From positions 140,009 through 204,008 of IMG/VR virus record IMGVR_UViG_3300024336_000005: DNA of 64,000 bases; one strand, 5' to 3'. Below are positions 1 to 29,351 of the stretch, one piece after another; the stretch's first letter is position 1; each line of letters begins with the position of its first letter. The translations under genes were made by a program, and so were the position numbers. The notes under the pieces are model-generated. The model was not told the origin of the DNA. It did no database searches and worked only from the letters and a program-made list of their open reading frames with translations.

Positions 1-1
1 G

Positions 2-349
2 GCGCGCGAGGTCGATCTTCTCTTGCAGAGGATTGAACTAAAGCTCCACCCACGTAAGGTAAAGCTTATGCCATACTATCAGAGACAGATTGTCACTGGC
101 ATTGTGGTAAATAATGAAAAATTGACGCTACCTAGATGGTACAAAGAGGAACTCTTCCTTGCTACAAAGGGAGAGGATCCGTCTACCTTCGATGAACAAT
201 TCAGGGGTGTTCTTGAGTATGTTCGTTCGGTAGATTCACAATTCTATAAAAAAATGTGCAACCATATGATTGCACCAAAGGAGAATGAAGATGGCAACAC
301 TTCCAGAGTGGATCACAGAGGTCCGATTTTATGCAACGACTCCCAGTAG
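2..349 (+). CDS. Retron-type reverse transcriptase, C-terminal fragment (5' end outside window)
   Basis: Frame open from base 2. LKLHPRKVKLM...RQIVTGIVVN..KLTLPR matches RT domain 7 with the retron VTG signature and start of the thumb. The YADD motif is not in the window. Confidence 0.75.
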   Translation, partial: AREVDLLLQRIELKLHPRKVKLMPYYQRQIVTGIVVNNEKLTLPRWYKEELFLATKGEDPSTFDEQFRGVLEYVRSVDSQFYKKMCNHMIAPKENEDGNTSRVDHRGPILCNDSQ

Positions 350-650
350 TGACCGCGCCCCTCAGGCACGCGGTTCAGTAACATTTGCTGGTGCTGTTTA
401 CTCACAGTTCACAGTCTGGCAGTCAAACGATGGCGCCCTTCAGGTTGTACTGCCGAGAGTAAAGAACCCAAAGTATAATCCTGACGAAGCTCACTCGAAG
501 ACCAACAAGATGTACTTCGAAGAGGTTGGTTGTACCAGCGGAGAGAAGAGGGAAGAGCTTGGCAAGGCTATCATTGGAAGCCTTCTCGAAGAGAGGAAGG
601 CGACTCCAGTCAAGGAGAGCAACACAGGTTCGGACGGCATTCCGTTTTAA
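291..650 (+). CDS. SpoVG-like (PC4/whirly-fold) nucleic-acid-binding protein with SSB-like tail
   Basis: ITEVRF...ARGSVTF...FTV..SNDGALQVVLPR...REELGKAII follows the SpoVG pattern. Ends GSDGIPF. SD AAGGAG at 278-283 before ATG 291. Confidence 0.6.
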   Translation: MATLPEWITEVRFYATTPSSDRAPQARGSVTFAGAVYSQFTVWQSNDGALQVVLPRVKNPKYNPDEAHSKTNKMYFEEVGCTSGEKREELGKAIIGSLLEERKATPVKESNTGSDGIPF

Positions 651-660
651 GGAGTAGCTC

Positions 661-963
661 ATGAAGATTGAAGACGTCAAGTTCCTCAAGAGTGACTGCA
701 CTGTCTCTGGCGCTATCGTAGATAACGTTGGACGTGGTGAAAATCGTTCGCCCCGTTGGGGCGGAGGAATTCAAGGAACAATTGTAGGGAATAATTTTCT
801 GGGGCAGGGAGTGAATGCTGTAACAATCATTCATCATCCCACTCAGATTACAACCACAGTGGACACCTTTACTCCGAAGAGGAACAAAGAGCTTGCCTTC
901 ATTAAGCTCGAGATGCTTGTCAACAAGTGGATCGAAGAAGTTAAGGCGCGGATGGGCTCCTGA
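661..963 (+). CDS. Peptide release factor (RF-1 domain)-like small protein, GGQ degenerate
   Basis: LGQGVNAVTIIHHPTQITTTV...KRNKELAFIKL resembles RF GGQxVN..SAVRITHLPTGI.V...QHKNKxxA. SD AAGGAG upstream. Confidence 0.5.
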   Translation: MKIEDVKFLKSDCTVSGAIVDNVGRGENRSPRWGGGIQGTIVGNNFLGQGVNAVTIIHHPTQITTTVDTFTPKRNKELAFIKLEMLVNKWIEEVKARMGS

Positions 964-1283
964 TGGGAGTCTTCAGCATGGCTCGCACTCAAGCCTTGGC
1001 AACTGCCTTCTCAAAGGCAATTGGAGAGACAGAAGGCTTGCATGATGTTGAGATTGCCTACGCCTTAGCAGCAACGATGCGTGGTCTTGGTGAAGTGCTA
1101 TACGATAAAGAAGACACCTCTAAGGAGGCTGTCCTCGAAGACTATGCAAGCTCACCAAGTTGGGCTGGAGCTTTAATGATACATGCAGATCAAATCCATG
1201 TAATCAGAGAGCTTTTCATTCGGACAAAAGAATCCAATATAGATGAAGGAGTTGAAACAGACTCCAAGGAGACAGACGAATAA
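963..1283 (+). CDS. Hypothetical protein
   Basis: ORF coupled to both neighbours (TGATG and TAATG overlaps). Confidence 0.7.
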   Translation: MGVFSMARTQALATAFSKAIGETEGLHDVEIAYALAATMRGLGEVLYDKEDTSKEAVLEDYASSPSWAGALMIHADQIHVIRELFIRTKESNIDEGVETDSKETDE

Positions 1284-1855
1284 TGGAGCAGGAACAGTTT
1301 GATACACTAGTTAGAGGGATCTCAGCGGTCCTTGATAATGTAAGGACCCCACAGTTTCGCCCTCCCTCAGTAAACTTCTTCATGCCTAATCGAGGCCAGC
1401 TGCAGTTTACAATCGCCGCTCCACGTTATCGTGAAGTTGAGCGAAAGAATCCTAAGGATGCTGGAGTTCGCTGGGCAGATAAGATGGGAGCGGTCTTCGT
1501 TGAGGCAGCTCCTGCCTTGCCGAACTCAGACAAGCTGGACTGGGACAATAAGAAGATGATCTTTGCCATGTCAGACAAGGACATCGGCCAGGTCCTTTGG
1601 GGCTTTGCTGCCAAGAAGGAAGACATCCGACTTGTTCACGCTCCTGATGAAAATGCAAAGCAAAACAATAAGACCTTCCGAATCCGAAAGGGAGATGACT
1701 TTAGAGGCGAGCCTCAGTGGATTCTATCTCTTACGGAAAAGAAGAATGGAGAGTCAAATGAAGTCTCTGTGTTCATCAAGGGACCGGATATGATGAGACT
1801 CAAGTCGCTGTTGGAGGGAGCAATTCCCTACATACTGGGCGCCCATCGAACTTAG
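1283..1855 (+). CDS. Whirly-family ssDNA-binding protein
   Basis: GAVFVEAAPA...DWDNKKMIFAMSDKDIG...LVHAP...IPYILG parallels plant Whirly G.VLLQFAPA...YDW.RKQVFSLSVTEIG...FFHDP...PYLLGW. Confidence 0.7.
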   Translation: MEQEQFDTLVRGISAVLDNVRTPQFRPPSVNFFMPNRGQLQFTIAAPRYREVERKNPKDAGVRWADKMGAVFVEAAPALPNSDKLDWDNKKMIFAMSDKDIGQVLWGFAAKKEDIRLVHAPDENAKQNNKTFRIRKGDDFRGEPQWILSLTEKKNGESNEVSVFIKGPDMMRLKSLLEGAIPYILGAHRT

Positions 1856-1864
1856 GAGAATCAG

Positions 1865-2380
1865 TTGCTATTGTGGCTGTACCTTTTGTCACTTCCCTTG
1901 ATGGCTTGCCAGCCATACTCAGACAGCTATTACTCACATCTTCCTGATGCAGAGCACAGAAGTGCGACCTGCCAAAAAGGTGTGAGTATAGGCATGCTGT
2001 ATGGTCTGGATCCTGAGATGGTTGCTGCTCTTCTAATGGAAGAGCAAAGGCATGCCGATAAAGATTATGAGGGCGGCATTCGCGGTCCTTTCCAAGTGTC
2101 AGCAAAAGATTGGTGTGAGGGCGGAACGTTTTCCACCTGTGCTGATCTAAACATTGCTGGTGCAAGAGCAATATCTCTTTTAAGAAATTGCTCAAAAATA
2201 AACTGGTCTAATTATGAATGCAAAAGGGAGAGGCGTAAGCCTCTTCCTTGGAGCAAGGTCCTCTGTCACTATGCCTCTGGCAACAAGTGCACAAAGAAGG
2301 GACTTGCTTACACCAAGCGTGTTATGAGATGGAGAAATAATGTCCGACGCTACAGTAGACTACGACTTGCTAGAAGGTAA
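1865..2380 (+). CDS. SLT/lytic transglycosylase-like protein with N-terminal hydrophobic signal
   Basis: YGLDPEMVAALLMEE (catalytic Glu region), GPFQV, NIAGARAI and HYASG motifs. Confidence 0.6.
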   Translation: MLLWLYLLSLPLMACQPYSDSYYSHLPDAEHRSATCQKGVSIGMLYGLDPEMVAALLMEEQRHADKDYEGGIRGPFQVSAKDWCEGGTFSTCADLNIAGARAISLLRNCSKINWSNYECKRERRKPLPWSKVLCHYASGNKCTKKGLAYTKRVMRWRNNVRRYSRLRLARR

Positions 2381-2846
2381 AGCCATTCGGCTCCTATTGG
2401 AGTCCAATGGAAAGCAGCTCAGCGTAAAGGAAGTCTTTGATGCAATGCTCGCAGAACAGGACGCACATGCTTTAGCCCAAAGGCTTCCTCAAGAGGAGAG
2501 CGCTGCAGCGCAACTTGTTGCTGCCTGCTATGCCTTGGTTCCCGGCCTGCATGTAGAGTCTATGTACTATGGGCTAATCTTAGCAGCCTATCTGAATAGA
2601 AATAATATTGAGCTAAGCGTTGAGTCTACTGATATGACACTTGAAGACTGTGCCATAAAGAGGAAGAGCCTGGCGATGGAGATTAACACCATCATGAAGA
2701 GGGCCTTTGATCGAACTCAAGAGCACTTCAAGGGTGCAGAAGCAATGCTATTTGAACTAGAAAGGGGACTGCGTGAAGATACTGATCTATGTGAAGAAGA
2801 ATCAACAGGAGCCTCTCTCGATAGTCTCGAAGGCTCTGAGGGATAG
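2340..2846 (+). CDS. Hypothetical protein
   Basis: 168-aa ORF with SD GGAG. Confidence 0.65.
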   Translation: MSDATVDYDLLEGKAIRLLLESNGKQLSVKEVFDAMLAEQDAHALAQRLPQEESAAAQLVAACYALVPGLHVESMYYGLILAAYLNRNNIELSVESTDMTLEDCAIKRKSLAMEINTIMKRAFDRTQEHFKGAEAMLFELERGLREDTDLCEEESTGASLDSLEGSEG

Positions 2847-3297
2847 CATCAAGGGAGGGTTTGAATGGGAGGTTGTCTCCTGTTGGGATGACTTCGCCGA
2901 TGCTCTTGGGGTGTTTAAGGTTTATGCAGAGGATGGTGCGCCAAGACCTGGTGTTCACATTGACCTTAAGTGGCCAAGTCCTACGACATTCATAAAGAAG
3001 CCCGCGCTAAAAGAAAAGGTGTGGGCAGACATAGAGACTAAGCTTGTCCCCTTGTTTCATAAGAAGGCTCCTGATAGGGAGCCTCTTGTCCTTACGGACC
3101 ATCAGCTTCAAACAATCCTAAAGCTCCTTGGGGAGGCAAAGATTCCATTTGAAGTAGACCATCCCAATGGATCAGTCATAGGGATAAATAAGAACCATGG
3201 GGTGGAGTACAGTTTAACTTCTGCAGACGTTGCCTCTATGGTGGCTGCTGCTTGGCTATTCAAGTCTGGCTCGGTACGCCTCGAACGAAAAGAGTAG
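2773..3297 (+). CDS. Hypothetical protein
   Basis: 174-aa ORF in the co-oriented gene run. Confidence 0.6.
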   Translation: MKILIYVKKNQQEPLSIVSKALRDSIKGGFEWEVVSCWDDFADALGVFKVYAEDGAPRPGVHIDLKWPSPTTFIKKPALKEKVWADIETKLVPLFHKKAPDREPLVLTDHQLQTILKLLGEAKIPFEVDHPNGSVIGINKNHGVEYSLTSADVASMVAAAWLFKSGSVRLERKE

Positions 3298-3311
3298 TCA
3301 AGGAAAGGTAG

Positions 3312-3470
3312 GTGCTGTTTAGCAAGTATGCTAAATTAGTAGTAGGTTACTTTGTATATGGTGCGGCGAGAGAGACGTCATTTAGAATTCATGGCGTCCT
3401 CAAAGAAATGGCTGAGCCAAACTTAACCTTAAATTCTGATTTTGAATATGTTATCTATAGCATTGATTGA
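3312..3470 (+). CDS. Small hypothetical protein (52 aa, below ORF-track cutoff)
   Basis: GTG at 3312 after purine-rich AGGAAAGG; reads MLFSKYAKLVVG...YSID* and fills the apparent gap. Confidence 0.5.
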   Translation: MLFSKYAKLVVGYFVYGAARETSFRIHGVLKEMAEPNLTLNSDFEYVIYSID

Positions 3471-3479
3471 AGAAGGCAG

Positions 3480-4220: not shown

Positions 4221-4222
4221 TC

Positions 4223-4498
4223 ATGAACGCAGAAACAGTAACAGTTGACGACCTTATCATTTACACAGCAAGCCTTGAGGCAGAGGTTACAGAACTGGAA
4301 GAGGATAGAGAGCTCTTGACTGTAGAGAACCGTGGCCTTCGTCGAAGTGTAGGGGCCTATAAGGCCAATGGAACACGTCGTCGCGCAGCTCAAACGGAAA
4401 CGCAGGAGCGGCTCCAGGAACTTGAGAGTGAGAACCTACGCTTGAGGCGTTCGGTGGCCGGCTATAAGGCAAATGCAACACGCCGCGCCAATCGATAA
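4223..4498 (+). CDS. Coiled-coil protein with internal duplication
   Basis: ENRGLRRSVGAYKANGTRRRA and ENLRLRRSVAGYKANATRRA. Confidence 0.65.
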   Translation: MNAETVTVDDLIIYTASLEAEVTELEEDRELLTVENRGLRRSVGAYKANGTRRRAAQTETQERLQELESENLRLRRSVAGYKANATRRANR

Positions 4499-5247
4499 TG
4501 GCCCTCTGGTTTGATGAGGAGGGCTGGCTTCATTCGGATGAAGCCGATCTCCTTGTGGAGCACAACAAGACTCATAAGTTCTCAAAGGGAATGCATTCCT
4601 ATATCAAAAAGAACTTTGGCAATCAGTTGCATGGAACCATTACGCACTATGACGCCTTGCCTTCCGCAAGGCGAACGATTCAGGGGATGACTTCACAGAG
4701 GAAGACCCCCTCAACTCACTTTATCATTGCGCGAGATGGAAGAATTCATCAGCTGGTTTCCATCCACGATAGAGCCTGGCATGCTGCCTTTAAGAGGCTC
4801 GGCGGTAAGGTTGTAGAATGGCCTAAGACCAATGGGCGTATGCCCATGGGCAATGGTCACACTACTGGAAGCCCCAACCAATGGTTCATCGGCATTGACC
4901 TTTCCAATTGGGGAAAGCTCGATGGACTAACACCTAGGATAGCAAGGTCTTGGACTGGTGAGCCTATCAATGAATCTGATGTCAGTATGGTTCGCGGTGT
5001 GTGCTGGGAGAGATACAGAAAGGAAGCAACCGACTCTTATGTTGAATTGCTGGCTGCTCTTATCTTAGAGTTGGACCTCAAGAAGAATATGCATTACAGA
5101 CATAGTGATACCTCTCCGACAAGGAAGGTAGATCCAGGTCCAGCCTTTGACTTCACAACATATCTCAATAATGCTTATCATTGTGTTGATACTCTAGATC
5201 GAATCTTTGATTTAGATAACTTAGATGAGGAAAACGAGGAGCCTTAA
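4498..5247 (+). CDS. N-acetylmuramoyl-L-alanine amidase (Amidase_2/AmpD-like)
   Basis: ITHY, STHFIIARDGRIHQLV..DRAWHA, IGIDL and HSD..P.RKVDPG motifs. Confidence 0.85.
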   Translation: MALWFDEEGWLHSDEADLLVEHNKTHKFSKGMHSYIKKNFGNQLHGTITHYDALPSARRTIQGMTSQRKTPSTHFIIARDGRIHQLVSIHDRAWHAAFKRLGGKVVEWPKTNGRMPMGNGHTTGSPNQWFIGIDLSNWGKLDGLTPRIARSWTGEPINESDVSMVRGVCWERYRKEATDSYVELLAALILELDLKKNMHYRHSDTSPTRKVDPGPAFDFTTYLNNAYHCVDTLDRIFDLDNLDEENEEP

Positions 5248-5861: not shown

Positions 5862-5869
5862 GGAATTAA

Positions 5870-6574
5870 ATGACAGACCAAAATTATACTGACGTTATCG
5901 TATTGCTTGATAAGAGTGGATCAATGAGATCCATTGCTGGTGCCACAGTCAAGGGCGTAGATGATCTTATCACTGAGCAGGCTGCCGTTGGTGGCAAGTG
6001 CCTTTTCACTTTGATTCAGTTCAATGTGAATATGGAAACCACTTATGATGCTATCCCCATCTGTGAAGCTGGGGAGTTTTCTAAGAGGGACTATCGTCCT
6101 GGTGGTGCGACGGCATTGATGGATGCCCTTGGGTATACCATCAACAATACAGGTGTCCGCTTTCAGATAATGAAAGAAGAAGAGCGCCCTAACAAGGTTT
6201 TGTTTGTCATTGTGTCAGACGGTCTTGAGAACCAGTCTCAAATGTTTAGAGCTGAGACAGTTGCACAAATGATTGCCCATCAAGAGAACTACTACAAGTG
6301 GGAGTTCGTCTTCATCGGAACAGATTTTGATGTCGCAGCAGAACAAGATAGGCTGAAGTTTAAGAGCGCCTACATATTCAATAAAGATGGCGCTGGCACT
6401 GATGGTATGTTTAAGGGTCTTTCTCGCAGCATTGCGCGAGCCCGTACAACTGGCGAGGACTACAACACGGCATACGTAGTTTCTTCGGCACAAGCCGTGG
6501 CGGCAGGAACAGCTGATGTAGAGAGTCTTGCGAAGGCCACAGAAGCCACAAAGGCCTCCGCCAATAAGCCCTAG
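5870..6574 (+). CDS. von Willebrand factor A (VWA) domain protein
   Basis: MIDAS DKSGSM, GATALMDA, IVSDGLEN, WEFVFIG. Confidence 0.85.
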   Translation: MTDQNYTDVIVLLDKSGSMRSIAGATVKGVDDLITEQAAVGGKCLFTLIQFNVNMETTYDAIPICEAGEFSKRDYRPGGATALMDALGYTINNTGVRFQIMKEEERPNKVLFVIVSDGLENQSQMFRAETVAQMIAHQENYYKWEFVFIGTDFDVAAEQDRLKFKSAYIFNKDGAGTDGMFKGLSRSIARARTTGEDYNTAYVVSSAQAVAAGTADVESLAKATEATKASANKP

Positions 6575-6595
6575 CATTCGCTAGGAGGAGCATGC

Positions 6596-10382: not shown

Positions 10383-10670
10383 ATGGCAGTTTATACAGGA
10401 GAGGTTAGGGGAGACTTTGATTCAAGGGTTGACCTGGTCAAATGGGACAACTACGGACTTGAATTTAAGTTTGCTGCCTTGAATGATGAGGCTTATGTTA
10501 TCAAGCAAGATGCAAAGGGGAAATGGGTGGCAGGCGAGTGGGTGGTAACAGAGGATAAGCTAAGCCAGCTCTTGCGTTCTCTTATCAGAGGCATGGGCTT
10601 TGGTAGATTTAGGATGGGCAAGGGTAGGAACACCACATTCATAGGAATAGTAGAAGTAGAAAATGTCTAA
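10383..10670 (+). CDS. Hypothetical protein
   Basis: ORF between the DUF3310 gene and recA. Confidence 0.6.
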
Positions 10671-11286
10671 AGATGATGCCCTCGGGCTCTTGATTAAGTC
10701 TTGCGAAAAGCAATTTGGTGAAGGTGCGGTCTTTGACCTCTCCTCATCTACTGTGCCCAAGGTTCCTAAGGTAAGCTTTGGGTCTATTAAGATAGACATT
10801 GCTGCAGGTGGTGGTGCCGGGAAGGGTCGTATCATTGAGGTCTATGGTCCTGAAAGCTCAGGTAAGACGACCCTGTGTTTGAATCTCCTTAGAGAGATTC
10901 AAAATGATCCAGATTATGTTGCTGAAGGCAGACGACCTCTATTTATTGATGCAGAGCATGCCCTTGACCTAGAGTATGCTACTAATTGCATTGGAGTAGA
11001 CCCTAATAATTTGTTGGTGGCCCAGCCCGATGTTGGTGAAGATGCGCTAGAGATAGCTGACATCTTCATTAGGAGTGGGAAGGTCTCGGCGGTCTTTGTC
11101 GACTCTGTTTCAGCACTACTCCCCAGAGCAGAGCTTGAGGGAGAGATGGGCAAGTCTCATGTTGGACTGCTTGCTAGGCTTATGTCGCAGGCTCTGCGTA
11201 AGTTGGTAGGACTTTGCCATAAGACTGGTACGATTCTTGTCTTTACTAACCAAATTCGTATGAAGATTGGTGTGATGTTTGGAAAT
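10663..11286 (+). CDS. recA: RecA recombinase, exon 1
   Basis: [16 protein letters not shown] (Walker A), [40 protein letters not shown]. Confidence 0.95.
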
Positions 11287-12217
11287 CAACTTTTAGCTGC
11301 ATAAACTAAGACTACATCAGTTATTGATCCGCTTAGGAGGATCTGCTGATGATTATAAATGGTTATAAATTCAATAAAATTGATGAATCTCATGTTGAGT
11401 ACTTAAAGGCTCACTATCAGGATAAACTAACGGATCTTTGTGAGGGCCTTGGCCTTTCCGATGAAACAGTTTATCGAATGATAAAAGCACTGGGCATCCA
11501 GCGAGAGAGGCATTGGAAGAGATCTATACCTCGGAATAAAGAGGCAGAAGATCTAATGAGAGATCCATATCTCTCACATGTAAAAATTGCAAAGAAGTAC
11601 AATTGTACACCGGAAGCAGTTGCAAAGCGACGGACTGACCTTGGCGTTACAGTCAGAAGGAATATGTGTTCCACTCAGCTAGAAGATAGGATTCAACTTA
11701 TCCTAGAAGAGATTGGGCTAGCATATATCCCACAACGAAACCTAGACAAATGGTCAATAGACTTTTATCTGGGTTGCAATTTTTACATAGACGTTCATGG
11801 TTCATGGGCACATTCAAAACCTAAGATTGTCGAAAGAGACAAGCGCAAGGCAAAATGGATGGAAGACAAGGGATTTAAATACCTTGTCATTCGTGAATCG
11901 GATATTGAAGAAGCCAAAAATAAGATCTTAGATTTTGCATCTGGGTTTCCCTTAGCGGTAACGTTAAGTAAAAAACCTTGTGAACTGCTACCCGCAGGTG
12001 TCGCCTCTAGGCGGCTAACGGTGAAACCCTTCATAATGGGCAATACCGTGCCAAGCCTCATAAATGAGGAAGGTGTAGAGACTATCGAAAGCACATCGAA
12101 AGATGGGAGTGAGTAGAGTAGGGATAGAGATAGGTACTATCCCCAAGCGCAAGGCTCCTCGTTTGAGGATGATGATATAGTCCGAGCCATAGAGATGATA
12201 AATCTATGGGAGTCTCG
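11287..12217 (+). mobile_element. Group I intron in recA
   Basis: Removal restores GVMFGN|PETTSGGNALKF. Exon ends in U and intron ends in G. P1: GGAAAU pairs with GUUUCC (11945-50). P10: UCUGG (11940-44) pairs with exon 2 CCAGA. P3: CCUUGUG/CGCAAGG. P7: GACUA (12080-84)/UAGUC (12178-82). S element GAUAUAGUCC. Confidence 0.93.
11349..12116 (+). CDS. Intron-encoded homing endonuclease, Vsr-like/EDxHD (I-Bth0305I-like) with N-terminal HTH repeats
   Basis: SD AGGAGG; two HTH-like segments; IDFY...YIDVHGSWAH...ERDKRK...GFKYLVIRESDI. The 3' end runs into the ribozyme core. Confidence 0.8.
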   Translation: MIINGYKFNKIDESHVEYLKAHYQDKLTDLCEGLGLSDETVYRMIKALGIQRERHWKRSIPRNKEAEDLMRDPYLSHVKIAKKYNCTPEAVAKRRTDLGVTVRRNMCSTQLEDRIQLILEEIGLAYIPQRNLDKWSIDFYLGCNFYIDVHGSWAHSKPKIVERDKRKAKWMEDKGFKYLVIRESDIEEAKNKILDFASGFPLAVTLSKKPCELLPAGVASRRLTVKPFIMGNTVPSLINEEGVETIESTSKDGSE

Positions 12218-12817
12218 CCAGAGACGACTAGTGGAGGCAACGCTCTGAAGTTTGCTGCCTCTCAGAGGATTGACATTCGTCGCAAGACAAGTGCAGCAGA
12301 TACTGAGAAGGATGCAGATGGAAATGTATTCCGCATCCCGACGACGGTCAAGTTCGTAAAGAACAAGCTGTTTCCTCCCTTCCGAGTTGCTCACATTGAT
12401 ATGGAAATGAATGTTGGCATCAACAGAACAGCAGAAATCTTGGACCTTGCCGCTGACAACGACATAATTCTTAAGTCAGGGGCATGGTACGAATACGTTG
12501 ACCCCTCCCGAACGGAACTCTTGTTAAAGCTTCGTCAGCATGAGGATGTAAAGGCTTTGATCCAAGAGATTAAAGCCGCTCCAAAGGATTTTAATGTCGT
12601 TCCGGAAAGTATCAAGGAAGGAGCTCGAAAGATAGGTCCCCTTCTTGATGCCTTGGAGTTCGATGACAAGGGCTGGAGGGTTCAAGGGCGTTCTTCTGCT
12701 ATAGAGGCCCTAGGAGAGAGACCAGAGTTATTGGAGGAGCTTAGAGTTCACATTCGTGAAATCTATTTCCCAACCAGTAGCCCACAAGCGGAAGTTTCAG
12801 ACGATATTCCGTTTTAA
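12218..12817 (+). CDS. recA: RecA recombinase, exon 2
   Basis: PETTSGGNALKFAASQRIDIR, VKNKLFPPFR, KSGAWY. Spliced protein is 407 aa and ends SDDIPF. Confidence 0.93.
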   Translation, partial: PETTSGGNALKFAASQRIDIRRKTSAADTEKDADGNVFRIPTTVKFVKNKLFPPFRVAHIDMEMNVGINRTAEILDLAADNDIILKSGAWYEYVDPSRTELLLKLRQHEDVKALIQEIKAAPKDFNVVPESIKEGARKIGPLLDALEFDDKGWRVQGRSSAIEALGERPELLEELRVHIREIYFPTSSPQAEVSDDIPF

Positions 12818-23083: not shown

Positions 23084-24076
23084 ATGAAAGACTTTGTACA
23101 TCTTCACCTGCACACTAAGTTCAGCCTACAAGATGGTACCACTGAGCCTGAAGGGCTCATGAAAAAGTGTGCCGATCATGGGATGAAGTCCGTTGGAGTG
23201 ACAGATCATGGGAATATGGCAGGGATGTGGGATTGTGCTAAGTACGCTAAGCAGTATGGCATTAATCTAATCCCTGGCAATGAATTCTATGTTGTTCCTG
23301 ATGCACAAAAGAGCAGGGGGAATGATTGGCGGAAGGGGAAGTCCTCTCATCTTGGACTTCTTGCTTATAGTCAGACCGGTTGGGATAATCTGTTGAGGCT
23401 TACTGCGTTATCGAATCTTGAGGGATTCTATAACGAACCTCGGATAGACTATAGGATGCTCAGAGAGAACTCCGAAGGATTGTGGTGTATGTCTGGCTGC
23501 CTCGGCGGCTTCATAAATACAGCCATTAAGAATAATCAATCCCCAAGGTTTGCGGTAGATATGCTGCATAGTATCTTTGGAGATAGGCTATCTCTTGAGA
23601 TACAGGTGAACCCAATACCTGACCAGCAGATTCTTAATGATGAAGTGATAGCAATTCATCATGCTACAAAGATTCCCCTCGTTGCTACCGTTGATGCTCA
23701 CTACTTAGATAAGACTGATAGCCACAACCAGGACATCCTGTTTGCAATGCAGTTAGGGAAATCCCTAGAGGACCCAGAGAGGCTGAAGATGCCTCCAGAA
23801 GAGCACTCTGTTGAAACCCCAGAGGAAGCCATCAAGAGGTTCACAGATAAGTATGGGAACCTTGGATTGGAGGCTTGTCGGAGGACGGTAGAGATTGGAG
23901 ACAACTCTCACTCAGAGATTACTTACCAAAGTAAGAGCTATAAAATTCCCACCCTTGATGTTGCAGCACAGCCAGACTTCCAAGAGTTTCTTAAATGGAA
24001 GACAGGCTGTGAATGTCACACCTCAGACAAAGGGGAGTGCTTAGTACATGGAAAAGCCTGTGGGCATAACCACTAG
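23084..24076 (+). CDS. dnaE: Stand-alone PHP domain of DNA polymerase III alpha
   Basis: FVHLHLHTKFSLQDG, TDHGNM, GNEFY, HLGLLA, GFY..PRID, SGCLGG, LVATVDAHY. Ends at the PHP-palm linker with a Cys/His tail. Confidence 0.9.
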   Translation: MKDFVHLHLHTKFSLQDGTTEPEGLMKKCADHGMKSVGVTDHGNMAGMWDCAKYAKQYGINLIPGNEFYVVPDAQKSRGNDWRKGKSSHLGLLAYSQTGWDNLLRLTALSNLEGFYNEPRIDYRMLRENSEGLWCMSGCLGGFINTAIKNNQSPRFAVDMLHSIFGDRLSLEIQVNPIPDQQILNDEVIAIHHATKIPLVATVDAHYLDKTDSHNQDILFAMQLGKSLEDPERLKMPPEEHSVETPEEAIKRFTDKYGNLGLEACRRTVEIGDNSHSEITYQSKSYKIPTLDVAAQPDFQEFLKWKTGCECHTSDKGECLVHGKACGHNH

Positions 24077-24099
24077 AAATAAAACTATAGGAGATTAGC

Positions 24100-24393
24100 A
24101 TGTTAGAAGTTACCCCCGCACCTGGATTCGCCATGGTGACACTTGAGAAGGACGCACAGACAAAGTCTGGACTTTTTGTTGCAGGCACACAGGACGGCCT
24201 AAAGAGAGGTCGCGTAGAAGGCCTTGGCCCTGAGTTTGTCACAGACCATGGTGTTTCAATCGCCTTCCCAGCAGATGTTGGAGATGTCGTTCTATTTGAC
24301 AAGGGAACTGAATTTTCAATCCCGGGGCAAGGAAGCTACTACTTCGTGTGGCGGAACAACACTGTTGGCAGGATCGTCGAGTCAGGAGAGTGA
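24100..24393 (+). CDS. groES: GroES-like co-chaperonin
   Basis: TKSGLFV, GRVEGLGP, VGDVVLFDK. Confidence 0.75.
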   Translation: MLEVTPAPGFAMVTLEKDAQTKSGLFVAGTQDGLKRGRVEGLGPEFVTDHGVSIAFPADVGDVVLFDKGTEFSIPGQGSYYFVWRNNTVGRIVESGE

Positions 24394-24719
24394 CAGATTC
24401 ACTTGGGAATGAATACAGAGTGGGAGATATACTCTTGTACGTCGCCGGGGGAGATCAGGCTCGGCCACAGATTGCCATGTTTGTTGAAGCTTATATGAAT
24501 GCAGATGGAGATCCTAAAAATAGGTTCCTTTTTGCGAACCGTAGAACGTGGAATCGAGATCAAAATAACGTGTCTGTCAGAACTATTGGACGGCCCTGGA
24601 GGGCCCGCTTGAAGCGGCTCTCTGATGTCCTTCCTCATGACAAGGCCCTCGAGGCAAGAGATTTCTTTGAGTATGCCCTGGAGCTAAAGGGATACGAGCT
24701 TGGGCTGCCTCTTCTTTGA
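24390..24719 (+). CDS. Hypothetical protein
   Basis: GTGA overlap with groES; TDSLGNEYRVGDIL motif. Confidence 0.6.
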   Translation: MTDSLGNEYRVGDILLYVAGGDQARPQIAMFVEAYMNADGDPKNRFLFANRRTWNRDQNNVSVRTIGRPWRARLKRLSDVLPHDKALEARDFFEYALELKGYELGLPLL

Positions 24720-24766
24720 GGTATGATGTCAGAATGGAGAGGTCTCAGAGAGAAGGAGAGGTTCAA

Positions 24767-25592
24767 ATGAAGAGTGATGATCAGAACTCCTACCTTTTAT
24801 TTTGGGCCCAGAAGGGGCTTAAGGCAAGAGGGCTCTGGGATGACCAGGTCTATAAGGATAGGGTAGATTACGAGTGGAAAGTTATCTCTCGTATGGGGTT
24901 TGCAGGATACTATCTTGTAGTCGCTGACTACGTGGCTTGGGCCCGTAGTCAAAGAATCCCAGTGGGGCCTGGACGTGGTTCAGGTGCTGGCTCTTTGATT
25001 GCCTATGCTGTAGGCATAACGGATGTGGATCCCATTAAGTGGGGCCTAATGTTTGAGAGGTTCTTGAACCCAGGTAGAGTCTCCATGCCTGACTTTGACA
25101 TTGACTTTGGAAAGAGAGATCGACTCAAGGTTTTTGACTACCTGTCAGAGAAATACGGACATCAGAACGTTTGTCAGATTGGTACTATTGGCACCATGAA
25201 GGCAAAGCTTGCGGTCAAAGATGTGGGGAGAACCCTTGGACTTGATCCCTCTGAGCTGGAAAGATTCTCTAGCTTAATTCCCGACGAAGAAAGAGGAGGA
25301 CAGGGCGATCATGCTATCACCTTGAGCCTCCTCTTGGATCCTCCCAGGGAGCTTGTTAAGGCTCACGGAGAGGCTCTTGCAAAGTTCAGAACTGCTTATG
25401 AATTCGACAAAGACTTTCATAGAGTTGTCAACCTTGCTGTAGAGCTGGAAGGAATCCCAAAGAGTTACGGGGTGCACGCAGCTGGAGTTGTCATCGGAAT
25501 TGATTCTCTATGGGGAGATATTCCTCTTAGGAAATCAAATGATGGAAGGCCTGTTAGTCAGTGGACTGACAAGCAGGTCGAAAAGATGGGGT
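24767..25592 (+). CDS. dnaE: DNA polymerase III alpha catalytic core, exon 1
   Basis: SD AGGAGAGG; GFAGYYLVV.D, GPGRGSGAGSL, FERFLNP.RVSMPDFDIDF, HAAGVVI. Confidence 0.93.
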
Positions 25593-25734
25593 TAGCTTAT
25601 TAGCCCCTGTATGGAGCAATCCGTACAGCAAACAAGGTGAACCCCAAAGCAAAGGGGGTGTGCTGCATCTGCAGCGCTAACAGGGGAACCTAAGTGAGCG
25701 AGTCTCATAAGGCAATCCTGTGCTAAGCTTTTGA

Positions 25735-25763
25735 TTGATTAGGTATTGCAAAATTGATATAAT
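25735..25763 (+). promoter_or_regulatory. Sigma70-type promoter for the intron HNH gene
   Basis: TTGATT-17 bp-TATAAT with extended -10 TG. Confidence 0.6.
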
Positions 25764-25790
25764 AGGAGCTCAACAAACAGGAGCTGCGTT

Positions 25791-26327
25791 ATGCAAAAGT
25801 TAGAAGGATTTGAGAAGGTAGAATCTGAAGGAATTTTGGGAGAGTATTATATTCATCCAGACGGAAGGATCTACAGAGATTACGGACATAGAATAAAATT
25901 TCTTTCCGAGAGGCCAAATGCTTATGGCTATAGTCGAATAAGCTTGCTTCATCAGGATGGACGTAGAGTGGATCGAATGATGCATCGATTATTGATGTTA
26001 ACATTTGTCCCAAATCCAGATAATAAGCCACAAGTCAATCATAAAGACGGAGATAAAAGCAACAATCAGCTTTCCAATTTGGAATGGGTTACAGATCGAG
26101 AAAATAAGCTTCATTCACATAGAGTGCTTGGAGCCAAATCTAGTGACAAAAGTTGTTTCTTATTTTATTTTGGGGGCTTTGTTCAAAGGTTTCCAAACAT
26201 CCAAGCTGCTTGTAACTATGCAGCTAAAAAATATGGGTGCTCCTCAAAGTCTTTATGTAAATATTACACATCTAATGGATGTGCAATTATTACAGAAGAA
26301 AGTGCAACGACTATCCTAACGGAGTAG
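25791..26327 (+). CDS. Intron-encoded HNH homing endonuclease (I-HmuI-like)
   Basis: HRLLM.TFVPNPDNKPQVNHKDGDKSNNQLSNLEWVT..EN..H; located in the P6 region of the intron. Confidence 0.9.
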   Translation: MQKLEGFEKVESEGILGEYYIHPDGRIYRDYGHRIKFLSERPNAYGYSRISLLHQDGRRVDRMMHRLLMLTFVPNPDNKPQVNHKDGDKSNNQLSNLEWVTDRENKLHSHRVLGAKSSDKSCFLFYFGGFVQRFPNIQAACNYAAKKYGCSSKSLCKYYTSNGCAIITEESATTILTE

Positions 26328-26420
26328 GGGGGGTATTGCTCCTCTCGAAGCGCCTTGATCTCTGAATCAATACAGAGAATATGATATAGTCTGTGCCACT
26401 AGAAATAGTGGAATAACACG

Positions 26421-28141
26421 TTGTAAAGTTCGACTTTCTGGGACTCCGCACACTTGATGTAATTGAAGACGCCTGTCGTAGCATAGAGAAAAGAACTGGA
26501 GTGACTATTGATTGGGAACAGACTCCCGAGGATGATGGTCCTACATTCGATATGCTCAGCAGAGGAGACACCTTTGGTGTCTTCCAGCTGGAGGCATCTG
26601 GTATCTCTGGGTTTACCAAGGGATATAAGCCAAGGTCTATCGATGACATCTCAATCATCTCAGCTCTATACAGACCTGGTCCGCTGGATAATGGGATGGT
26701 AGATGCCATTCTGTCTGTCCGCAAGGGGAAGAAGATTGAAGAGAGTCCTGTTGATGTCATTAAAGAAATCCTTAAGGATACGAATGGGGTTCTGACATAT
26801 CAGGAACAAGTATTAGCAATATCAAGGGAGATGGCTGGGTTTACCCTGTCGGGTGCTGATCTATTGAGGCGCGCGATTGGCAAGAAGCTGCCCGAAGAGA
26901 TGCAAGCGCAGGAGCAAAACTTTGTTGATGGCTCCGTAGAGAAGGGGTATCCAAAGCATCAAGCTTTGGAAGTATTTGAAATCATTAAGAAATTCGCTGA
27001 CTATTGTTTGTCATATGATACTAAGGTATTGACCGATAAGGGGCCTCTCTCAATTGGTCATATTGTAGAAAATCAGCTAGAGGTTTCTGTTTATTCTATT
27101 GATGAGCATGGGCTTGTCTACTCTCAGCCGGTGGCTCAGTGGCATGACAGGGGCATAAGAGAAGTCTTTGAATACAAGCTTGAGGATGGCTCTGTCATCC
27201 GAGCGACCGAAGATCATAAGTTTATGACCGTCGATGGAGATATGCTTGCTATTGAAACAATCTTCCTGCAGAATAGGGATATGCTTGTCATTGAAACAGG
27301 CAAGATTCAAATAGGGGAGATTGAAATGAAGCCTTATAATAAACTAAATGACCTGGACAAACAACTTGTCCAACGACTGTACTATGAAGGATTATCCTTT
27401 GAGGACATCTCAAAGGAAGCTGTGGTATCTCAACGTTCTGTTAGTCGTGTTTTGCAAGAGGCTAATATTAACACCAGAAGGAAAAACCGTTATACCCTTA
27501 ATGAAAGCTTCTTCTGTGGAGCATATGATCATTATGAATGTGCATATTTTTTAGGCCTACTGGCAGCAGATGGATGCGTTACTCATAAGGATTACATCGC
27601 CCTCCAGCTTATTGATGAAGAACTTGTCTTATGGTTTCGCAAAGCGATCGAATACTCAGGAGAAGTTCGGCTTATCCTTGGCGAGGAGCGAAAGCCCCCT
27701 GGCCAAGATGCCTATAGGGTGAACTTTAGCTCTGCCATAATGTCAGAGGAACTTCGTTCATATGGAATCATTGCCGGAAGACATCTTCAAGCAATTCCGA
27801 AGTTAGAAGATTCAATTGTGCCTCATTTTATTCGAGGGTATTTTGATGGAGATGGATGTGTTTACTTAAGGCCAGAGGGTTCTGGTGGAGTTGTTCATAT
27901 TGTAGCCTCCGAGGCGTTTTGCGAATCGCTTAAAGAATACTTTGGATTCGGAACAATTAGTTCACATCCCAGTGGTATGTATTATTGGAGGATCTTTGCA
28001 AAAAAACATGTGAATGTTTTTTATGAAGCCCTATATGATTCTGATGGTTCAGAGACCCTGTGCCTTAATCGCAAAAAGCAACTAATGGAAGCCTTCCTAC
28101 GGAGCTACAAGTATGAAAATTGTTGGAAAGCAAAGGATTGA
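26421..28141 (+). CDS. dnaE: DnaE exon 2 + N-intein + in-frame LAGLIDADG endonuclease
   Basis: KFDFLG, GVFQLE, ALYRPGP, YQEQV, ADLLRRAIGKK, FADY then CLSYDT (intein start 27005). The frame ends at stop 28141. Confidence 0.92.
27005..27300 (+). mobile_element. Split intein N-half, Npu/Ssp DnaE-type
   Basis: CLSYDTKVLT...QPVAQWHDRG..EVFEY.LEDGS.IRATEDHKFMTVDG.ML.I..IF (blocks A and B). Confidence 0.92.
27326..28141 (+). CDS. LAGLIDADG homing endonuclease with N-terminal HTH (own SD/ATG, in frame with IntN)
   Basis: SD AGGGGAG at 27313-19; YFLGLLAADGCV and FIRGYFDGDGCV; LNRKK. Confidence 0.85.
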   Translation: MKPYNKLNDLDKQLVQRLYYEGLSFEDISKEAVVSQRSVSRVLQEANINTRRKNRYTLNESFFCGAYDHYECAYFLGLLAADGCVTHKDYIALQLIDEELVLWFRKAIEYSGEVRLILGEERKPPGQDAYRVNFSSAIMSEELRSYGIIAGRHLQAIPKLEDSIVPHFIRGYFDGDGCVYLRPEGSGGVVHIVASEAFCESLKEYFGFGTISSHPSGMYYWRIFAKKHVNVFYEALYDSDGSETLCLNRKKQLMEAFLRSYKYENCWKAKD

Positions 28142-29351
28142 GGATCAATCAGTCTATGATATTGGAGTAGAAAAAGACCATAACTTTCTTCTTGCTGATG
28201 GACAGGTTGCTTCCAATTGCTTTAACAAAAGCCATAGTGTGGCCTATTCAATGCTTTCATATAGAACAGCTTATCTTAAGTGTCACTATCCTTCTGACTT
28301 CTATGCTGCAGAGCTTACGAGCCACGAAGGGGAAGTCAAGAAGCTTCTCCCAGCAATGGCAGATGCTCGAGCACACCACATGAAGATCAAGACTCCTGAT
28401 ATTAATCTTAGTGAGGAGTGCTTTACGGCGACCGCCAGACATGAAATAAGGTTTGGACTTGCTGGAATTAAGGGGCTTGGGACAAAGGCTCTTCAGTCTA
28501 TTATGAATGAAAGAGCCAATGGGAGTTTTGAGTCTATCACTGGCTTATGCAAGAGGCTCTCCTCTTCTGAGATTAAGTCGAATAATCTCACAGCCTTAGC
28601 AAGGTCTGGTGCATTTTCCCAAATAGAAACTGGAATGAACACAGCAGAGCTTGCAGAGTATGCCGTTAACACAGCGATTGCTCTTCGTAGCTATCATAAA
28701 GATGAGAAGAAAGGCCAGGTGTCTATCTTTTCTGTTATGACTGAAGCTCCAGAAAATGAGATTAATGTTCAGAGACCGTCAATTCATTTGGATGATGGAG
28801 ATGAACTGGAGCTAGAGAAGGAAGCCTTGGGCTTTTATATCTCAGGATCTCCTCTGGATAAGTACAATACTATTAAGGAAAGATCCCATATAGATGAAAT
28901 TGAAAGCTTAGAAGTTGATGGCATTTGGGTATCAGTTCTTGCCAGGATAACAGAGCTTAAGATTAGAAATGGAAAGAGGGGAAGCTTTGCAATACTACAG
29001 CTAGAAGATACTAGCGGCAGCATTGGAGCTAAGATTTGGTCTAACAATATGGCTGAAGCTCGTCCATACTTAGAAGAAGGTAAGAGTGTTGTTGTCAGAG
29101 GAAAGACAAACTCCTACAAAGGACTTGAAATTGTTGTGGATTCTATTGTAGACGCTGAATCAGAAGTGAAAAGACTTTTGAAGAGAGTGGTCATTCATAG
29201 ACTTGATTCCACGATTTTAAATACACTCTTGCAATTGCCTGCAGGAAATGTTCCTATAGATCTTGAGCTTTCAAATGGCCAGATCAAACAACGACTTGGA
29301 TTTTTTGAAATCCAACCCCACATGCTGAGGGAACTGAATGAGATGGACTGA
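28113..29351 (+). CDS. dnaE: Split intein C-half (35 aa, 28113-28217) + DnaE C-terminal extein (HhH, OB)
   Basis: SD GGAG at 28101; MKIVGKQ...VYDIGVEKDHNFLLADGQVASN|CFNKSHSVAY; PDINLS, IRFGLAGIKGLG, EKEALGFYISGSPL, LEDTSG. Confidence 0.93.
   Translation: MKIVGKQRIEDQSVYDIGVEKDHNFLLADGQVASNCFNKSHSVAYSMLSYRTAYLKCHYPSDFYAAELTSHEGEVKKLLPAMADARAHHMKIKTPDINLSEECFTATARHEIRFGLAGIKGLGTKALQSIMNERANGSFESITGLCKRLSSSEIKSNNLTALARSGAFSQIETGMNTAELAEYAVNTAIALRSYHKDEKKGQVSIFSVMTEAPENEINVQRPSIHLDDGDELELEKEALGFYISGSPLDKYNTIKERSHIDEIESLEVDGIWVSVLARITELKIRNGKRGSFAILQLEDTSGSIGAKIWSNNMAEARPYLEEGKSVVVRGKTNSYKGLEIVVDSIVDAESEVKRLLKRVVIHRLDSTILNTLLQLPAGNVPIDLELSNGQIKQRLGFFEIQPHMLRELNEMD

What the first reader, a model, noticed from the sequence alone, without database searches (positions are those of the whole stretch)
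1283..1855. Whirly-like (plant organellar ssDNA-binding) protein in a phage
Seen: collinear matches to recalled plant Whirly motifs across the whole domain (G-x-V-x-x-x-x-APA, DW-x-x-K-x-x-F-x-(L/M)S-x-x-(D/E)IG, H-x-P, PY(I/L)LG). The KGKAAL motif appears replaced by NRGQL. Known: Whirly proteins are characterised mainly in plant plastids and mitochondria, whose replication machinery includes phage-derived parts. Inference: this may be a phage relative or source of the Whirly family, acting in phage replication or recombination.
Basis: partly seen in the sequence, partly recalled or inferred. Interest (0 to 1): 0.75.

Follow-up and report, generated by a model that had tools for sequence, protein, structure and literature searches.

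The report
Whirly-family protein in marine jumbo phage
A 204-kb marine phage encodes a true relative of the plant organelle "Whirly" single-stranded-DNA-binding proteins, always paired with a small unknown partner gene, in a genome where no ordinary SSB was found, which shows that this supposedly plant-specific family has a large, unstudied branch in phages.

Summary
The ORF at 1283..1855 (+, 190 aa) is real and is a Whirly-family protein. It passes Pfam PF08536 (30.2 bits, cut-off 23). Profile comparison with plant Whirlies gives 96.5% probability. Its AlphaFold model (pLDDT 95.6) matches only plant Whirly crystal structures at the top (TM 0.63-0.84).

It belongs to a large, unnamed radiation: 131 clusters at 50% identity, and 113 of 121 scanned members hit PF08536. 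Every genomic context I inspected looked like a large phage. None of the family matched PHROGs, and four members tried found nothing in 50,697 GenBank phage genomes.

New here: a ~100-135-aa helical gene sits directly upstream of Whirly, overlapping its start by one base in the window, in 14 of 20 distinct loci from several lineages. In this lineage the pair follows a retron-type reverse transcriptase and a SpoVG-like protein ending in an SSB-like "IPF" tip.

[quoted passage not shown] No OB-fold SSB, gp32 or gp2.5 family was detected.

Best reading: a non-OB single-stranded DNA binder or protector used in phage replication and recombination. The function is inferred, not shown. Whether phages gave plants this family cannot be decided, because the tree is unrooted.

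The parts
1283..1855 (+). Whirly-family gene (190 aa). N-terminal helix 3-20, two four-stranded beta-sheet/helix repeats, C-terminal helix 167-184. pI 9.3.
   Evidence: ORF and translation. Pfam PF08536 30.2 bits, above the cut-off of 23. AF2 pLDDT 95.6. Foldseek top 16 PDB hits are all plant Whirly. Top 6 Swiss-Prot hits are WHY1/2/3. pI.
963..1283 (+). Conserved partner gene (106 aa, predicted helical, no known family). Its stop codon overlaps the Whirly ATG by one base.
   Evidence: hhalign of the window-clade family (A7) against the gene directly upstream of Whirly in distant loci (A8): probability 91.9%, E 7e-7. A merged HMM finds it directly upstream of Whirly in further non-seed loci: L019, L022, L011, L012, L028, L024, L033, L034. 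No Pfam, PDB or Atlas identity. The overlap is seen.
661..963 (+). Small ORF (100 aa) between the SpoVG-like gene and the partner. Conserved only in the closest relatives and replaced in L033/L034.
291..650 (+). SpoVG-like protein (about 119 aa from the ATG at 291) with a disordered linker and a conserved C-terminal ...IPF tip that resembles the bacterial SSB C-terminal tip. This is context and a possible functional neighbour.
   Evidence: Alignment A5: 6 of 6 homologues end in IP[FW]. The PDB profile's top hit is SpoVG 2i9z, E 0.043. hhalign against phage SpoVG: E 1.9e-4, probability 48%. AF2 pLDDT 67, tail below 50. Foldseek top 10 are all SpoVG.
23..349 (+). C-terminal part of a retron-type reverse transcriptase, cut by the window start. 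The full 284-aa gene is at L001:8213-9067. This is lineage-specific context.
   Evidence: Pfam RVT_1 3.9e-21. PADLOC retron RT models score down to 1.2e-58. L001 is identical to the window over 11,852 nt.
10663..12817 (+). RecA-like recombinase in two pieces (10663..11304 and 12206..12817) with a 255-aa ORF between them, 9.4 kb downstream of Whirly. This is context.
   Evidence: PF00154 matches at G001:150689-151297 (2.8e-74) and 152214-152432 (2.2e-15). The intervening ORF has no Pfam hit.

Best explanation
The gene encodes a genuine, divergent member of the Whirly family (PF08536).

Shown: family membership by sequence profile and predicted fold; phage origin; a conserved, start/stop-overlapping upstream partner gene; and presence of the region in seawater metatranscriptome libraries, which is not proof of transcription.

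Inferred from the solved plant proteins: it forms a homotetramer through its C-terminal helices. It binds single-stranded nucleic acid, without sequence specificity, across and between its basic beta-sheets.

Inferred from gene context: together with the small helical partner it coats and protects single-stranded DNA made during replication, resection and RecA-mediated recombination of this 204-kb phage. On this reading it stands in for, or supplements, the OB-fold SSB that the phage appears to lack. The neighbouring SpoVG-like protein with an SSB-like IPF tip may supply the protein-recruiting tail that Whirly itself lacks.
For: Identity:
- Pfam Whirly E 4.5e-7, above the gathering score.
- 113 of 121 homologues hit PF08536, best 1.4e-43.
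- hhalign against plant and algal Whirlies: 96.5% for the window clade and 99.8% (E 6.7e-28) for a central phage group.
- AF2 pLDDT 95.6.
- The top 16 PDB hits are all Whirly, E 1e-9 to 1e-7, TM 0.63-0.84. Pur-alpha and MRP1/2 appear only at E > 1e-3.
- Residues conserved across the phage homologues (H119 in 121/121, W87, G69, K91, D86) match columns invariant or nearly invariant in the plant and algal alignment.
- Basic pI of about 9.

Phage origin:
- The same sequence lies in a 204,008-bp virus record rated 100% complete.
- It carries replication and virion genes.

Function by context:
- Whirly lies directly after a RecA-like gene in L027.
- RecA lies within 10 kb in L013, L025 and the window clade.
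- A 3'-5' exonuclease and a HIRAN-like gene lie downstream in L018.
- A DprA/YpsA-like gene is adjacent in L015.
- No PF00436 SSB, gp32, gp2.5-like or UvsY family was found in the complete genome.
- None was found among the >=150-aa plus-strand ORFs of window 1-41 kb that were scanned.

Partner:
-.

RNA libraries:
- Contigs at 883-1418 and 1512-1693 in a metatranscriptome run.
Against: No binding, oligomer or genetic data exist.

The negative SSB searches are weak. Phage SSBs are diverse, the gp32 and gp2.5 controls rang nowhere, and the same tool's first look missed Whirly itself in the window's genome.

The whole region is one long co-directional gene array with no promoter or terminator signal above shuffles. 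Adjacency alone therefore proves little.

The window clade has lost several residues that are consensus in the family: K34 to M, HDP to HAP, GW to GA.

Plant Whirlies and the Whirly-fold phage protein ChmC also bind RNA (PMC11077065).

Contigs in RNA libraries can be DNA carry-over.
Confidence: 0.6

Rival explanations
1. It is mainly an RNA-binding protein, for example handling or protecting phage mRNA. This would resemble the Whirly-fold protein ChmC of nucleus-forming jumbo phages, the MRP1/2 guide-RNA matchmakers, or the RNA roles of maize WHY1.
For: ChmC is a homotetrameric Whirly-fold protein that prefers ssRNA (Kd 58 nM) over ssDNA and is needed for infection (PMC11077065). MRP1/2 appear among the weaker structural matches. 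SpoVG-family genes, known nucleic-acid binders, recur near phage Whirlies.
Against: ChmC has beta-beta-beta-alpha repeats, a disordered N/G-rich tail and no detectable sequence similarity to known proteins. This protein has four-strand repeats, no tail, and sequence-level membership in PF08536. Its best structural matches are the ssDNA-binding plant proteins. Four family members gave no tblastn hit in any GenBank phage, chimalliviruses included. The neighbours are DNA-metabolism genes.
Confidence: 0.15
2. In this lineage Whirly is the single-strand binder of a reverse-transcriptase cassette (E1-like, JAB-like, retron-type RT, SpoVG-like, partner, Whirly). It would bind or protect the cDNA that the RT makes, as part of a phage counter-defence or superinfection-exclusion device.
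For: A retron-type RT (PADLOC 1.2e-58) lies 1 kb upstream on the same strand. The block is syntenic in L003, L006, L010, L033 and L034 at only 22-51% protein identity. A related RT lies 4-6 kb upstream of Whirly in a second, very different group: L018, L020, L021.
Against: Whirly occurs without any RT within 7-8 kb in L013, L015, L023-L028. Of the 79 best RT-related viral loci, only the window's own genome and two relatives carry Whirly. No retron msr/msd or other RNA family was found, and no DGR-type repeats. There is no intergenic room next to the RT. Synteny within one phage lineage can be simple descent.
Confidence: 0.12
3. It acts as a transcription factor or nucleoid-organising protein on phage or host DNA. 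This is the original plant 'Whirly transcription factor' and nucleoid-compaction roles.
For: Plant Whirlies were first described as ssDNA-binding transcription activators, and barley WHY1 compacts nucleoids (PMC9070903). The protein is basic.
Against: There is no helix-turn-helix or other specificity element. Nucleoid compaction by plant WHY1 depends on a monocot-specific PRAPP motif, which was not seen here. The context is replication and repair rather than regulation.
Confidence: 0.08
4. The similarity is spurious or the ORF is not a gene.
For: Single-sequence phmmer against the PDB found no Whirly. Identity to plant proteins is only about 19-21%.
Against: Several lines agree: Pfam, profile-profile comparison, fold, 131 homologous clusters, a conserved ORF with 53-60% identical orthologues, and presence in at least 9 seawater runs.
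Confidence: 0.01

Closest known systems
Plant Whirly proteins (StWHY1/PBF-2 p24, StWHY2, AtWHY1/2/3; Pfam PF08536)
   Same: Same Pfam family. Same fold over about 170 residues (TM 0.63-0.84, rmsd 2.6-3.5 A). Shared core residues: G..F.E.A, (Y/L)DW..K, DIG, H(D/A)P, PY(I/L)LG. A basic residue (R37) aligns with the second lysine of KGKAAL, which plants need for 24-mer assembly and cooperative ssDNA binding (PMC3245945).
   Different: Only about 19-21% identity. No transit peptide and no acidic/aromatic C-terminal tail. An extra N-terminal helix (residues 3-20). KGKAAL is replaced by MPNRGQL, HDP by HAP, and the GW of the C-terminal (L/M)GW motif by GA. Encoded by a phage and paired with a partner gene that is not known in plants.
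Automatically annotated phage entry A0A6J5NR37 'Whirly transcription factor [uncultured Caudovirales phage]', and two unnamed Uroviricota clusters in the ESM Atlas
   Same: Best viral structural match (E 1.1e-8, 25% identity). Atlas clusters of 69 and 71 viral members share the fold at TM 0.63-0.74.
   Different: These are database labels only. I found no paper that describes them. PHROGs has no such family.
ChmC (PhiPA3 gp61, PhiKZ gp67, Goslar gp176) of Chimalliviridae
   Same: A jumbo-phage protein of the wider Whirly/PUR fold class. It is a homotetramer and a single-stranded nucleic-acid binder (PMC11077065).
   Different: ChmC has three-strand repeats, a disordered condensate-forming tail, RNA preference and no sequence similarity to Whirly. 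The protein here is a sequence-level Whirly, in a phage with a DnaE-type polymerase. Whether the phage forms a nucleus was not tested.
OB-fold phage and bacterial SSBs (E. coli SSB, T4 gp32, T7 gp2.5)
   Same: The proposed job is the same: coat ssDNA in replication and recombination and work with a RecA/UvsX-type recombinase. Plant WHY2 binds long ssDNA cooperatively, as SSB does.
   Different: An unrelated fold. No acidic C-terminal tip on Whirly; in this phage an IPF-tipped tail sits on the neighbouring SpoVG-like protein instead.
sPC4/Whirly-fold relatives: Pur-alpha, T. brucei MRP1/2, and the Shedu and Menshen sensor domains
   Same: The same broad fold class of beta-sheet plus helix repeats that bind single strands.
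   Different: Only weak structural matches (E > 1e-3, TM below 0.62). Not the same sequence family.

Membership tests
Whirly (Pfam PF08536) | Scores above the family's curated profile cut-off | tested here: met
   30.2 bits against a cut-off of 23, E 4.5e-7, covering profile positions 8-123 of 136. 113 of 121 homologues also match.
Whirly (Pfam PF08536) | Whirly fold: two four-stranded antiparallel sheets, each followed by a helix, plus a C-terminal helix-loop-helix | tested here: met
   AF2 model with pLDDT 95.6 has the expected element order. The top 16 PDB and top 6 Swiss-Prot matches are all Whirly.
Whirly (Pfam PF08536) | Conserved core motifs: (Y)DW..K, DIG/EIG, HDP, PY(L/I)(L/M)GW | tested here: met
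   Present as LDW...K, DIG, HAP and PYILGA. H119, W87, K91, D86 and G69 are invariant or nearly so across 121 homologues, and the matching plant columns are conserved too.
Whirly (higher-plant subgroup) | KGKAAL motif, with a second lysine needed for 24-mer assembly | tested here: not met
   The literal motif is absent. MPNRGQL aligns there, with R37 at the second-lysine position. The review PMC9070903 says green-algal and liverwort Whirlies also lack the motif, so it defines higher-plant Whirlies, not the family.
Whirly (Pfam PF08536) | Homotetramer with a central pore | not testable with these tools
   Only monomer prediction was available. The C-terminal helices that make the plant tetramer are predicted.
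Whirly (Pfam PF08536) | Sequence-unspecific binding of single-stranded DNA or RNA | not testable with these tools
   Needs EMSA or fluorescence polarisation. Only the basic pI of 9.3 was computed.
ChmC (chimallivirus Whirly-fold RNA binder) | beta-beta-beta-alpha repeats, a C-terminal disordered N/G- and S/D/E-rich tail, and no similarity to PF08536 | tested here: not met
   Four-strand repeats, no residue with pLDDT below 50, and the protein ends seven residues after the main C-terminal helix (167-184). It is a Pfam Whirly member. ChmC features are from PMC11077065.
OB-fold SSB (PF00436), gp32, gp2.5 | OB-fold profile match | tested here: not met
   The protein matches only Whirly. The genome shows no match to PF00436, PF08804 or PF10991. 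The controls for the last two were silent, so that part is inconclusive for the genome.
Retron system (considered for the upstream cassette) | Retron-type RT, plus an msr/msd non-coding RNA, plus an effector | tested here: inconclusive
   The RT matches retron RT models at 1e-58. No Rfam RNA family other than tRNA was found. There is no intergenic space beside the RT. Whirly matches no PADLOC effector model.

The most novel reading that the evidence does not exclude
Whirly plus its conserved helical partner is a previously unrecognised, non-OB single-strand-DNA system of large uncultured phages. It would replace SSB and its mediator. In this lineage it would work with an IPF-tipped SpoVG-like adaptor and perhaps with a retron-type reverse transcriptase. 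The Whirly proteins of green plants would descend from such a viral gene, like the phage-type RNA polymerase and Twinkle helicase of organelles.
Probability: 0.2. Interest if true: 0.8.

Novelty: new variant of a known kind. Interest (0 to 1): 0.55.

Why it matters
Plant biologists describe Whirly proteins as plant-specific, and as having arisen as a eukaryotic component of green-algal chloroplast nucleoids (PMC9070903, PMC4758235). Here the family is seen to have a much more diverse branch in tailed phages. The eukaryotic clan possibly lies inside that branch. This makes the origin of an important organelle genome-maintenance factor directly testable.

For phage biology, it points to a candidate non-OB SSB system (Whirly plus partner) in abundant marine jumbo phages that have bacterial-type replisomes but no recognisable SSB. 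It also offers small, soluble, confidently modelled proteins for biochemical study.

Tried and rejected
- PHROGs: no family for the protein or for any of 121 homologues.
- Single-sequence PDB search: only a chance cystatin-like hit.
- GenBank phages: megablast of window 1-8000 and tblastn with four different family members found nothing.
- PF08536 six-frame search of the window's own genome: silent, because the tool's first look missed it. I do not count this as evidence.
- Diversity-generating retroelement idea for the RT: no template/variable-type repeats.
- Retron RNA or group I/II intron: only tRNAs at Rfam gathering scores.
- My by-eye SpoVG guess for ORF 270..650: it failed pairwise BLAST. 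It was later supported by profile and fold evidence.
- Partner gene: no identity from Pfam, PDB profile or Atlas. The Atlas 'Rubis-subs-bind' feature hits at 0.89-0.90 are within chance range.
- UvsY-like mediator idea for the partner: no PF11056 match in the genome.
- Promoter and terminator scan: nothing above shuffles.
- Two structural papers on Whirly-DNA contacts are not held, so DNA-contact residues could not be mapped.
- A broad alignment was too diverse for locus finding.

Full report
**Observation.** The window has an ATG-started ORF at 1283..1855 on the plus strand, encoding 190 residues. A good AAGGAG ribosome-binding site lies 11 nt upstream. The TAA stop of the preceding ORF (963..1283) shares its last base with the ATG.

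The DW motif is present but has one residue more than written (DWDNKKMIFAMSDKDIG at 86).

**Identity.**
- Against Pfam the protein matches only Whirly (PF08536): E 4.5e-7, 30.2 bits against a curated cut-off of 23, over profile positions 8-123 of 136.
- A word-indexed search of 5.8 billion proteins gave the window's own sequence and four orthologues at 53-60% identity.
- A profile of these five sequences hits only plant Whirly structures in the PDB: 1l3a E 0.019 and 4koo E 0.61.
- An exhaustive HMMER pass over 1.84 billion cluster representatives gave 131 families at E <= 1e-3.
- Of 121 near-full-length members, 113 match PF08536 on their own, best 1.4e-43.
- Profile-profile comparison with ten plant and green-algal Whirlies gives 96.5% probability (E 7e-10) for the window's clade. 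For a central phage group it gives 99.8% (E 6.7e-28).

**Structure.**
- An AlphaFold2 model built on the 121-sequence alignment has pLDDT 95.6 and pTM 0.86. It has the expected beta4-alpha-beta4-alpha order, plus an extra N-terminal helix.
- With Foldseek the 16 best PDB chains are all StWHY1, StWHY2 and AtWHY1-3 (E 1e-9 to 1e-7, TM 0.63-0.84).
- Pur-alpha and MRP1/2 follow only at E > 1e-3.
- Swiss-Prot models give the same picture.
- H119 is invariant in all 121 homologues. W87, G69, K91 and D86 are nearly invariant, and the same positions are conserved in plants.
- The window's clade is a divergent branch: K34 to M, HDP to HAP, GW to GA.
- R37 aligns with the second lysine of the plant KGKAAL motif. 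[quoted passage not shown]

**Where it lives.**
- The window is bases 296-64295 of a 143-kb IMG/VR virus record.
- An identical copy (0 mismatches over 11,852 nt) lies in a 204,008-bp record rated 100% complete.
- A 203,906-nt contig from a seawater run holds the same stretch at a different coordinate. This suggests a circularly permuted or circular assembly.
- At least nine seawater DNA runs hold the region completely. Three metatranscriptome runs hold parts of it, including contigs at 883-1418 and 1512-1693. DNA carry-over is not excluded.
- The phage encodes:
  - RNR, a primase-helicase, an exonuclease and virion proteins;
  - a DnaE-type polymerase broken up by HNH genes;
  - PhoH, dUTPase, ThyA, DHFR and a DHH phosphoesterase;
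  - a resolvase-like nuclease and an AAA ATPase;
  - a RecA in two pieces.
- It has no close cultured relative.

**Distribution of the family.**
- Every context I inspected is a large phage-like contig.
- A motif scan found nine true relatives in IMG/VR. It found only one in 185,579 prokaryotic species genomes: a 25.7-kb contig of a Thermoplasmata MAG that shares several neighbour genes with the phage contigs.
- The ESM Atlas has two Uroviricota clusters with this fold and no Pfam label, one Chlorophyta cluster labelled Whirly, and one Pseudomonadota cluster of longer proteins.
- AlphaFold DB clusters show green-algal Whirlies first, then further entries (organism names withheld) at lower similarity.
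- BFVD's best hit is an entry auto-named 'Whirly transcription factor [uncultured Caudovirales phage]'.
- PHROGs has no such family. Four family members find nothing in 50,697 GenBank phage records.
- I found no paper that describes phage Whirlies. Plant reviews call the family plant-specific.

**Neighbourhood.** I called ORFs in 16 loci and clustered them.

The most consistent neighbour is the gene directly upstream of Whirly:
- The window-clade family (A7) and the family upstream of Whirly in distant loci (A8) are homologous by hhalign: 91.9%, E 7e-7.
- A merged HMM recovers non-seed members directly upstream of Whirly in L019, L022, L011, L012, L028 and L024, and later in L033 and L034.
- In all, 14 of the 20 distinct loci gathered up to that have upstream sequence carry it adjacent. 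One carries it 2 kb away, and five lack it (L013, L015, L025, L026, L027). L033 and L034, found later, also carry it adjacent.
- It is about 100-135 aa, predicted helical, and has no detectable relatives.

Other recurrent neighbours are DNA-metabolism genes:
- RecA-like genes, directly adjacent in L027.
- A PolA-type 3'-5' exonuclease, a HIRAN-like gene and an AAA ATPase.
- A DprA/YpsA-like gene, RNR and ThyX.
- SpoVG.
- ClpP, in 10 loci.

**The lineage-specific cassette.**
- Upstream of the pair, the window's lineage has a JAB-like gene, a ThiF/E1-like gene and a 284-aa reverse transcriptase. The RT matches retron RT models at 1e-58.
- Next comes a protein whose profile, hhalign comparison and modelled fold all point weakly but consistently to SpoVG.
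- All six homologues of that protein end in a disordered linker plus IP[FW]. That resembles the DDDIPF tip of bacterial SSB; this resemblance rests on my own knowledge.
- The block is syntenic in L003, L006, L010, L033 and L034 at 22-51% protein identity.
- A related RT lies 4-6 kb from Whirly in a second, very different group.
- Whirly also occurs without any RT in at least six other contexts.
- Among the 79 best RT-related viral loci, only the window's own genome and two relatives carry Whirly.
- No retron RNA, intron or DGR repeat was detected.
- I therefore treat the RT link as a minority hypothesis.

**Missing SSB.**
- The complete genome shows no match to PF00436 at E <= 0.1, while the control rang in 11 of 14 genomes.
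- It shows no match to gp32, gp2.5-like or UvsY families. Those controls were mostly silent.
- None of the >=150-aa plus-strand ORFs scanned in window 1-41 kb hits an SSB family.
- Whirly is single-copy.
- This is suggestive, not conclusive.

**Mechanism.**
- Shown: family membership, fold, phage origin, the conserved partner and the DNA-metabolism context.
- Inferred from the plant structures: tetramerisation through the C-terminal helices, and sequence-unspecific single-strand binding on the basic sheets.
- Inferred from context: a role as ssDNA coat or protector in replication-coupled recombination. The partner may act as a mediator or regulator, and the IPF-tipped SpoVG-like protein as a possible recruiting adaptor.
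- Rivals are an RNA-binding role like ChmC (PMC11077065), a role tied to the RT's cDNA product, and a regulatory or nucleoid role.

**Evolution.**
- I built a quick IQ-TREE (LG+C20+F+G4, 134 rows, 161 columns). I left out fragments and rows with partial matches: P0009, P0014, P0027, P0030, P0039, P0067, P0069, P0081, P0092, P0106, P0108, P0117, P0119, P0135, P0136, P0148 and P0151.
- The tree puts the eight eukaryotic sequences in one clan (SH-aLRT 98) and the window's clade in another (98).
- With midpoint rooting the eukaryotes lie inside the phage-type diversity, next to a group that includes P0104 and P0129. Both of those were shown to sit in phage-like contigs. The joining branches have only 88-89 support.
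- The tree is unrooted, and the phage rows were collected with a query-centred profile. The direction of transfer therefore cannot be told.

**Verdict.** The Whirly assignment is secure. The replication and recombination role is the best-supported inference, and the 'source of the plant family' idea remains open. The finding is a new, phage-borne variant of a known family with a newly noticed partner gene. It is of moderate to good interest.

Noticed in passing
window 23..349 (full gene L001:8213-9067); L001:5951-8213: A retron-type reverse transcriptase (PADLOC RT_III-A 1.2e-58) in a lytic-looking 204-kb marine phage. It is directly preceded by a ThiF/E1-like gene and a weakly JAB-like gene. 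No retron RNA was found. The block is conserved in related phages at 22-51% identity.
   Followed up: partly
window 291..650: A divergent SpoVG-like protein whose six homologues all end in a disordered linker plus IP[FW], like the protein-recruiting tip of bacterial SSB. Phage SpoVG genes near other Whirlies (L013:5617-6033, L028:6157-6486) end in acidic/aromatic tails.
   Followed up: partly
window 10663..11304, 11349..12116, 12206..12817: The RecA-like recombinase is split into two ORFs (profile positions 3-199 and 195-262) by a 255-aa ORF with no Pfam match. No group I intron was detected at Rfam gathering score. In relative L006 the gene is intact (364 aa).
   Followed up: partly
window 23084..29351: The DnaE-type (Pol III alpha) polymerase lies in several ORFs: PHP 23084..24076, DNA_pol3_alpha 24716..25603, and further pieces at 26501..28141 and 28113..29351. 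These are interleaved with HNH or other endonuclease genes (25791..26327, and the C-terminal half of 26501..28141).
   Followed up: no
proteins P0029, P0036, P0058, P0094, P0125, P0131: Some phage Whirlies carry a CxxC...CxxC (zinc-ribbon-like) insert between the second and third strands of the first sheet.
   Followed up: no
L001:183-831 (about 9-10 kb upstream of the Whirly gene at L001:10001, beyond the window's start): Three phage-encoded tRNA genes in a row. None lies in the 64-kb window itself.
   Followed up: no
window 1865..2380, 4498..5247 and 5870..6574: Cell-wall and other genes sit just downstream of Whirly. ORF 1865..2380 has an orthologue with a weak SLT (lytic transglycosylase) hit. 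ORF 4498..5247 is an Amidase_2 endolysin-like protein. ORF 5870..6574 is a VWA-like protein of phrog_7371.
   Followed up: no
window 1-6000 against run X1 and G001: The same stretch sits at 192.6-198.6 kb of a 203,906-nt contig, but at about 140-146 kb of the 204,008-bp IMG/VR record. This implies a circularly permuted or circular genome assembly.
   Followed up: no
L013:16438-16456 and neighbours: One distant Whirly-bearing contig (84 kb, filed in an NCBI MAG) carries a Kyano_Gp96 domain gene, PhoH, DHFR, UDG and a RecA-like gene. This hints at a cyanophage-like background for some Whirly phages.
   Followed up: no
protein P0009 (103 aa): A 96%-identical truncated form of the window's Whirly with a different N-terminus is seen on a 1.5-kb contig. 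It is probably a frameshifted or mis-called copy in another sample.
   Followed up: no
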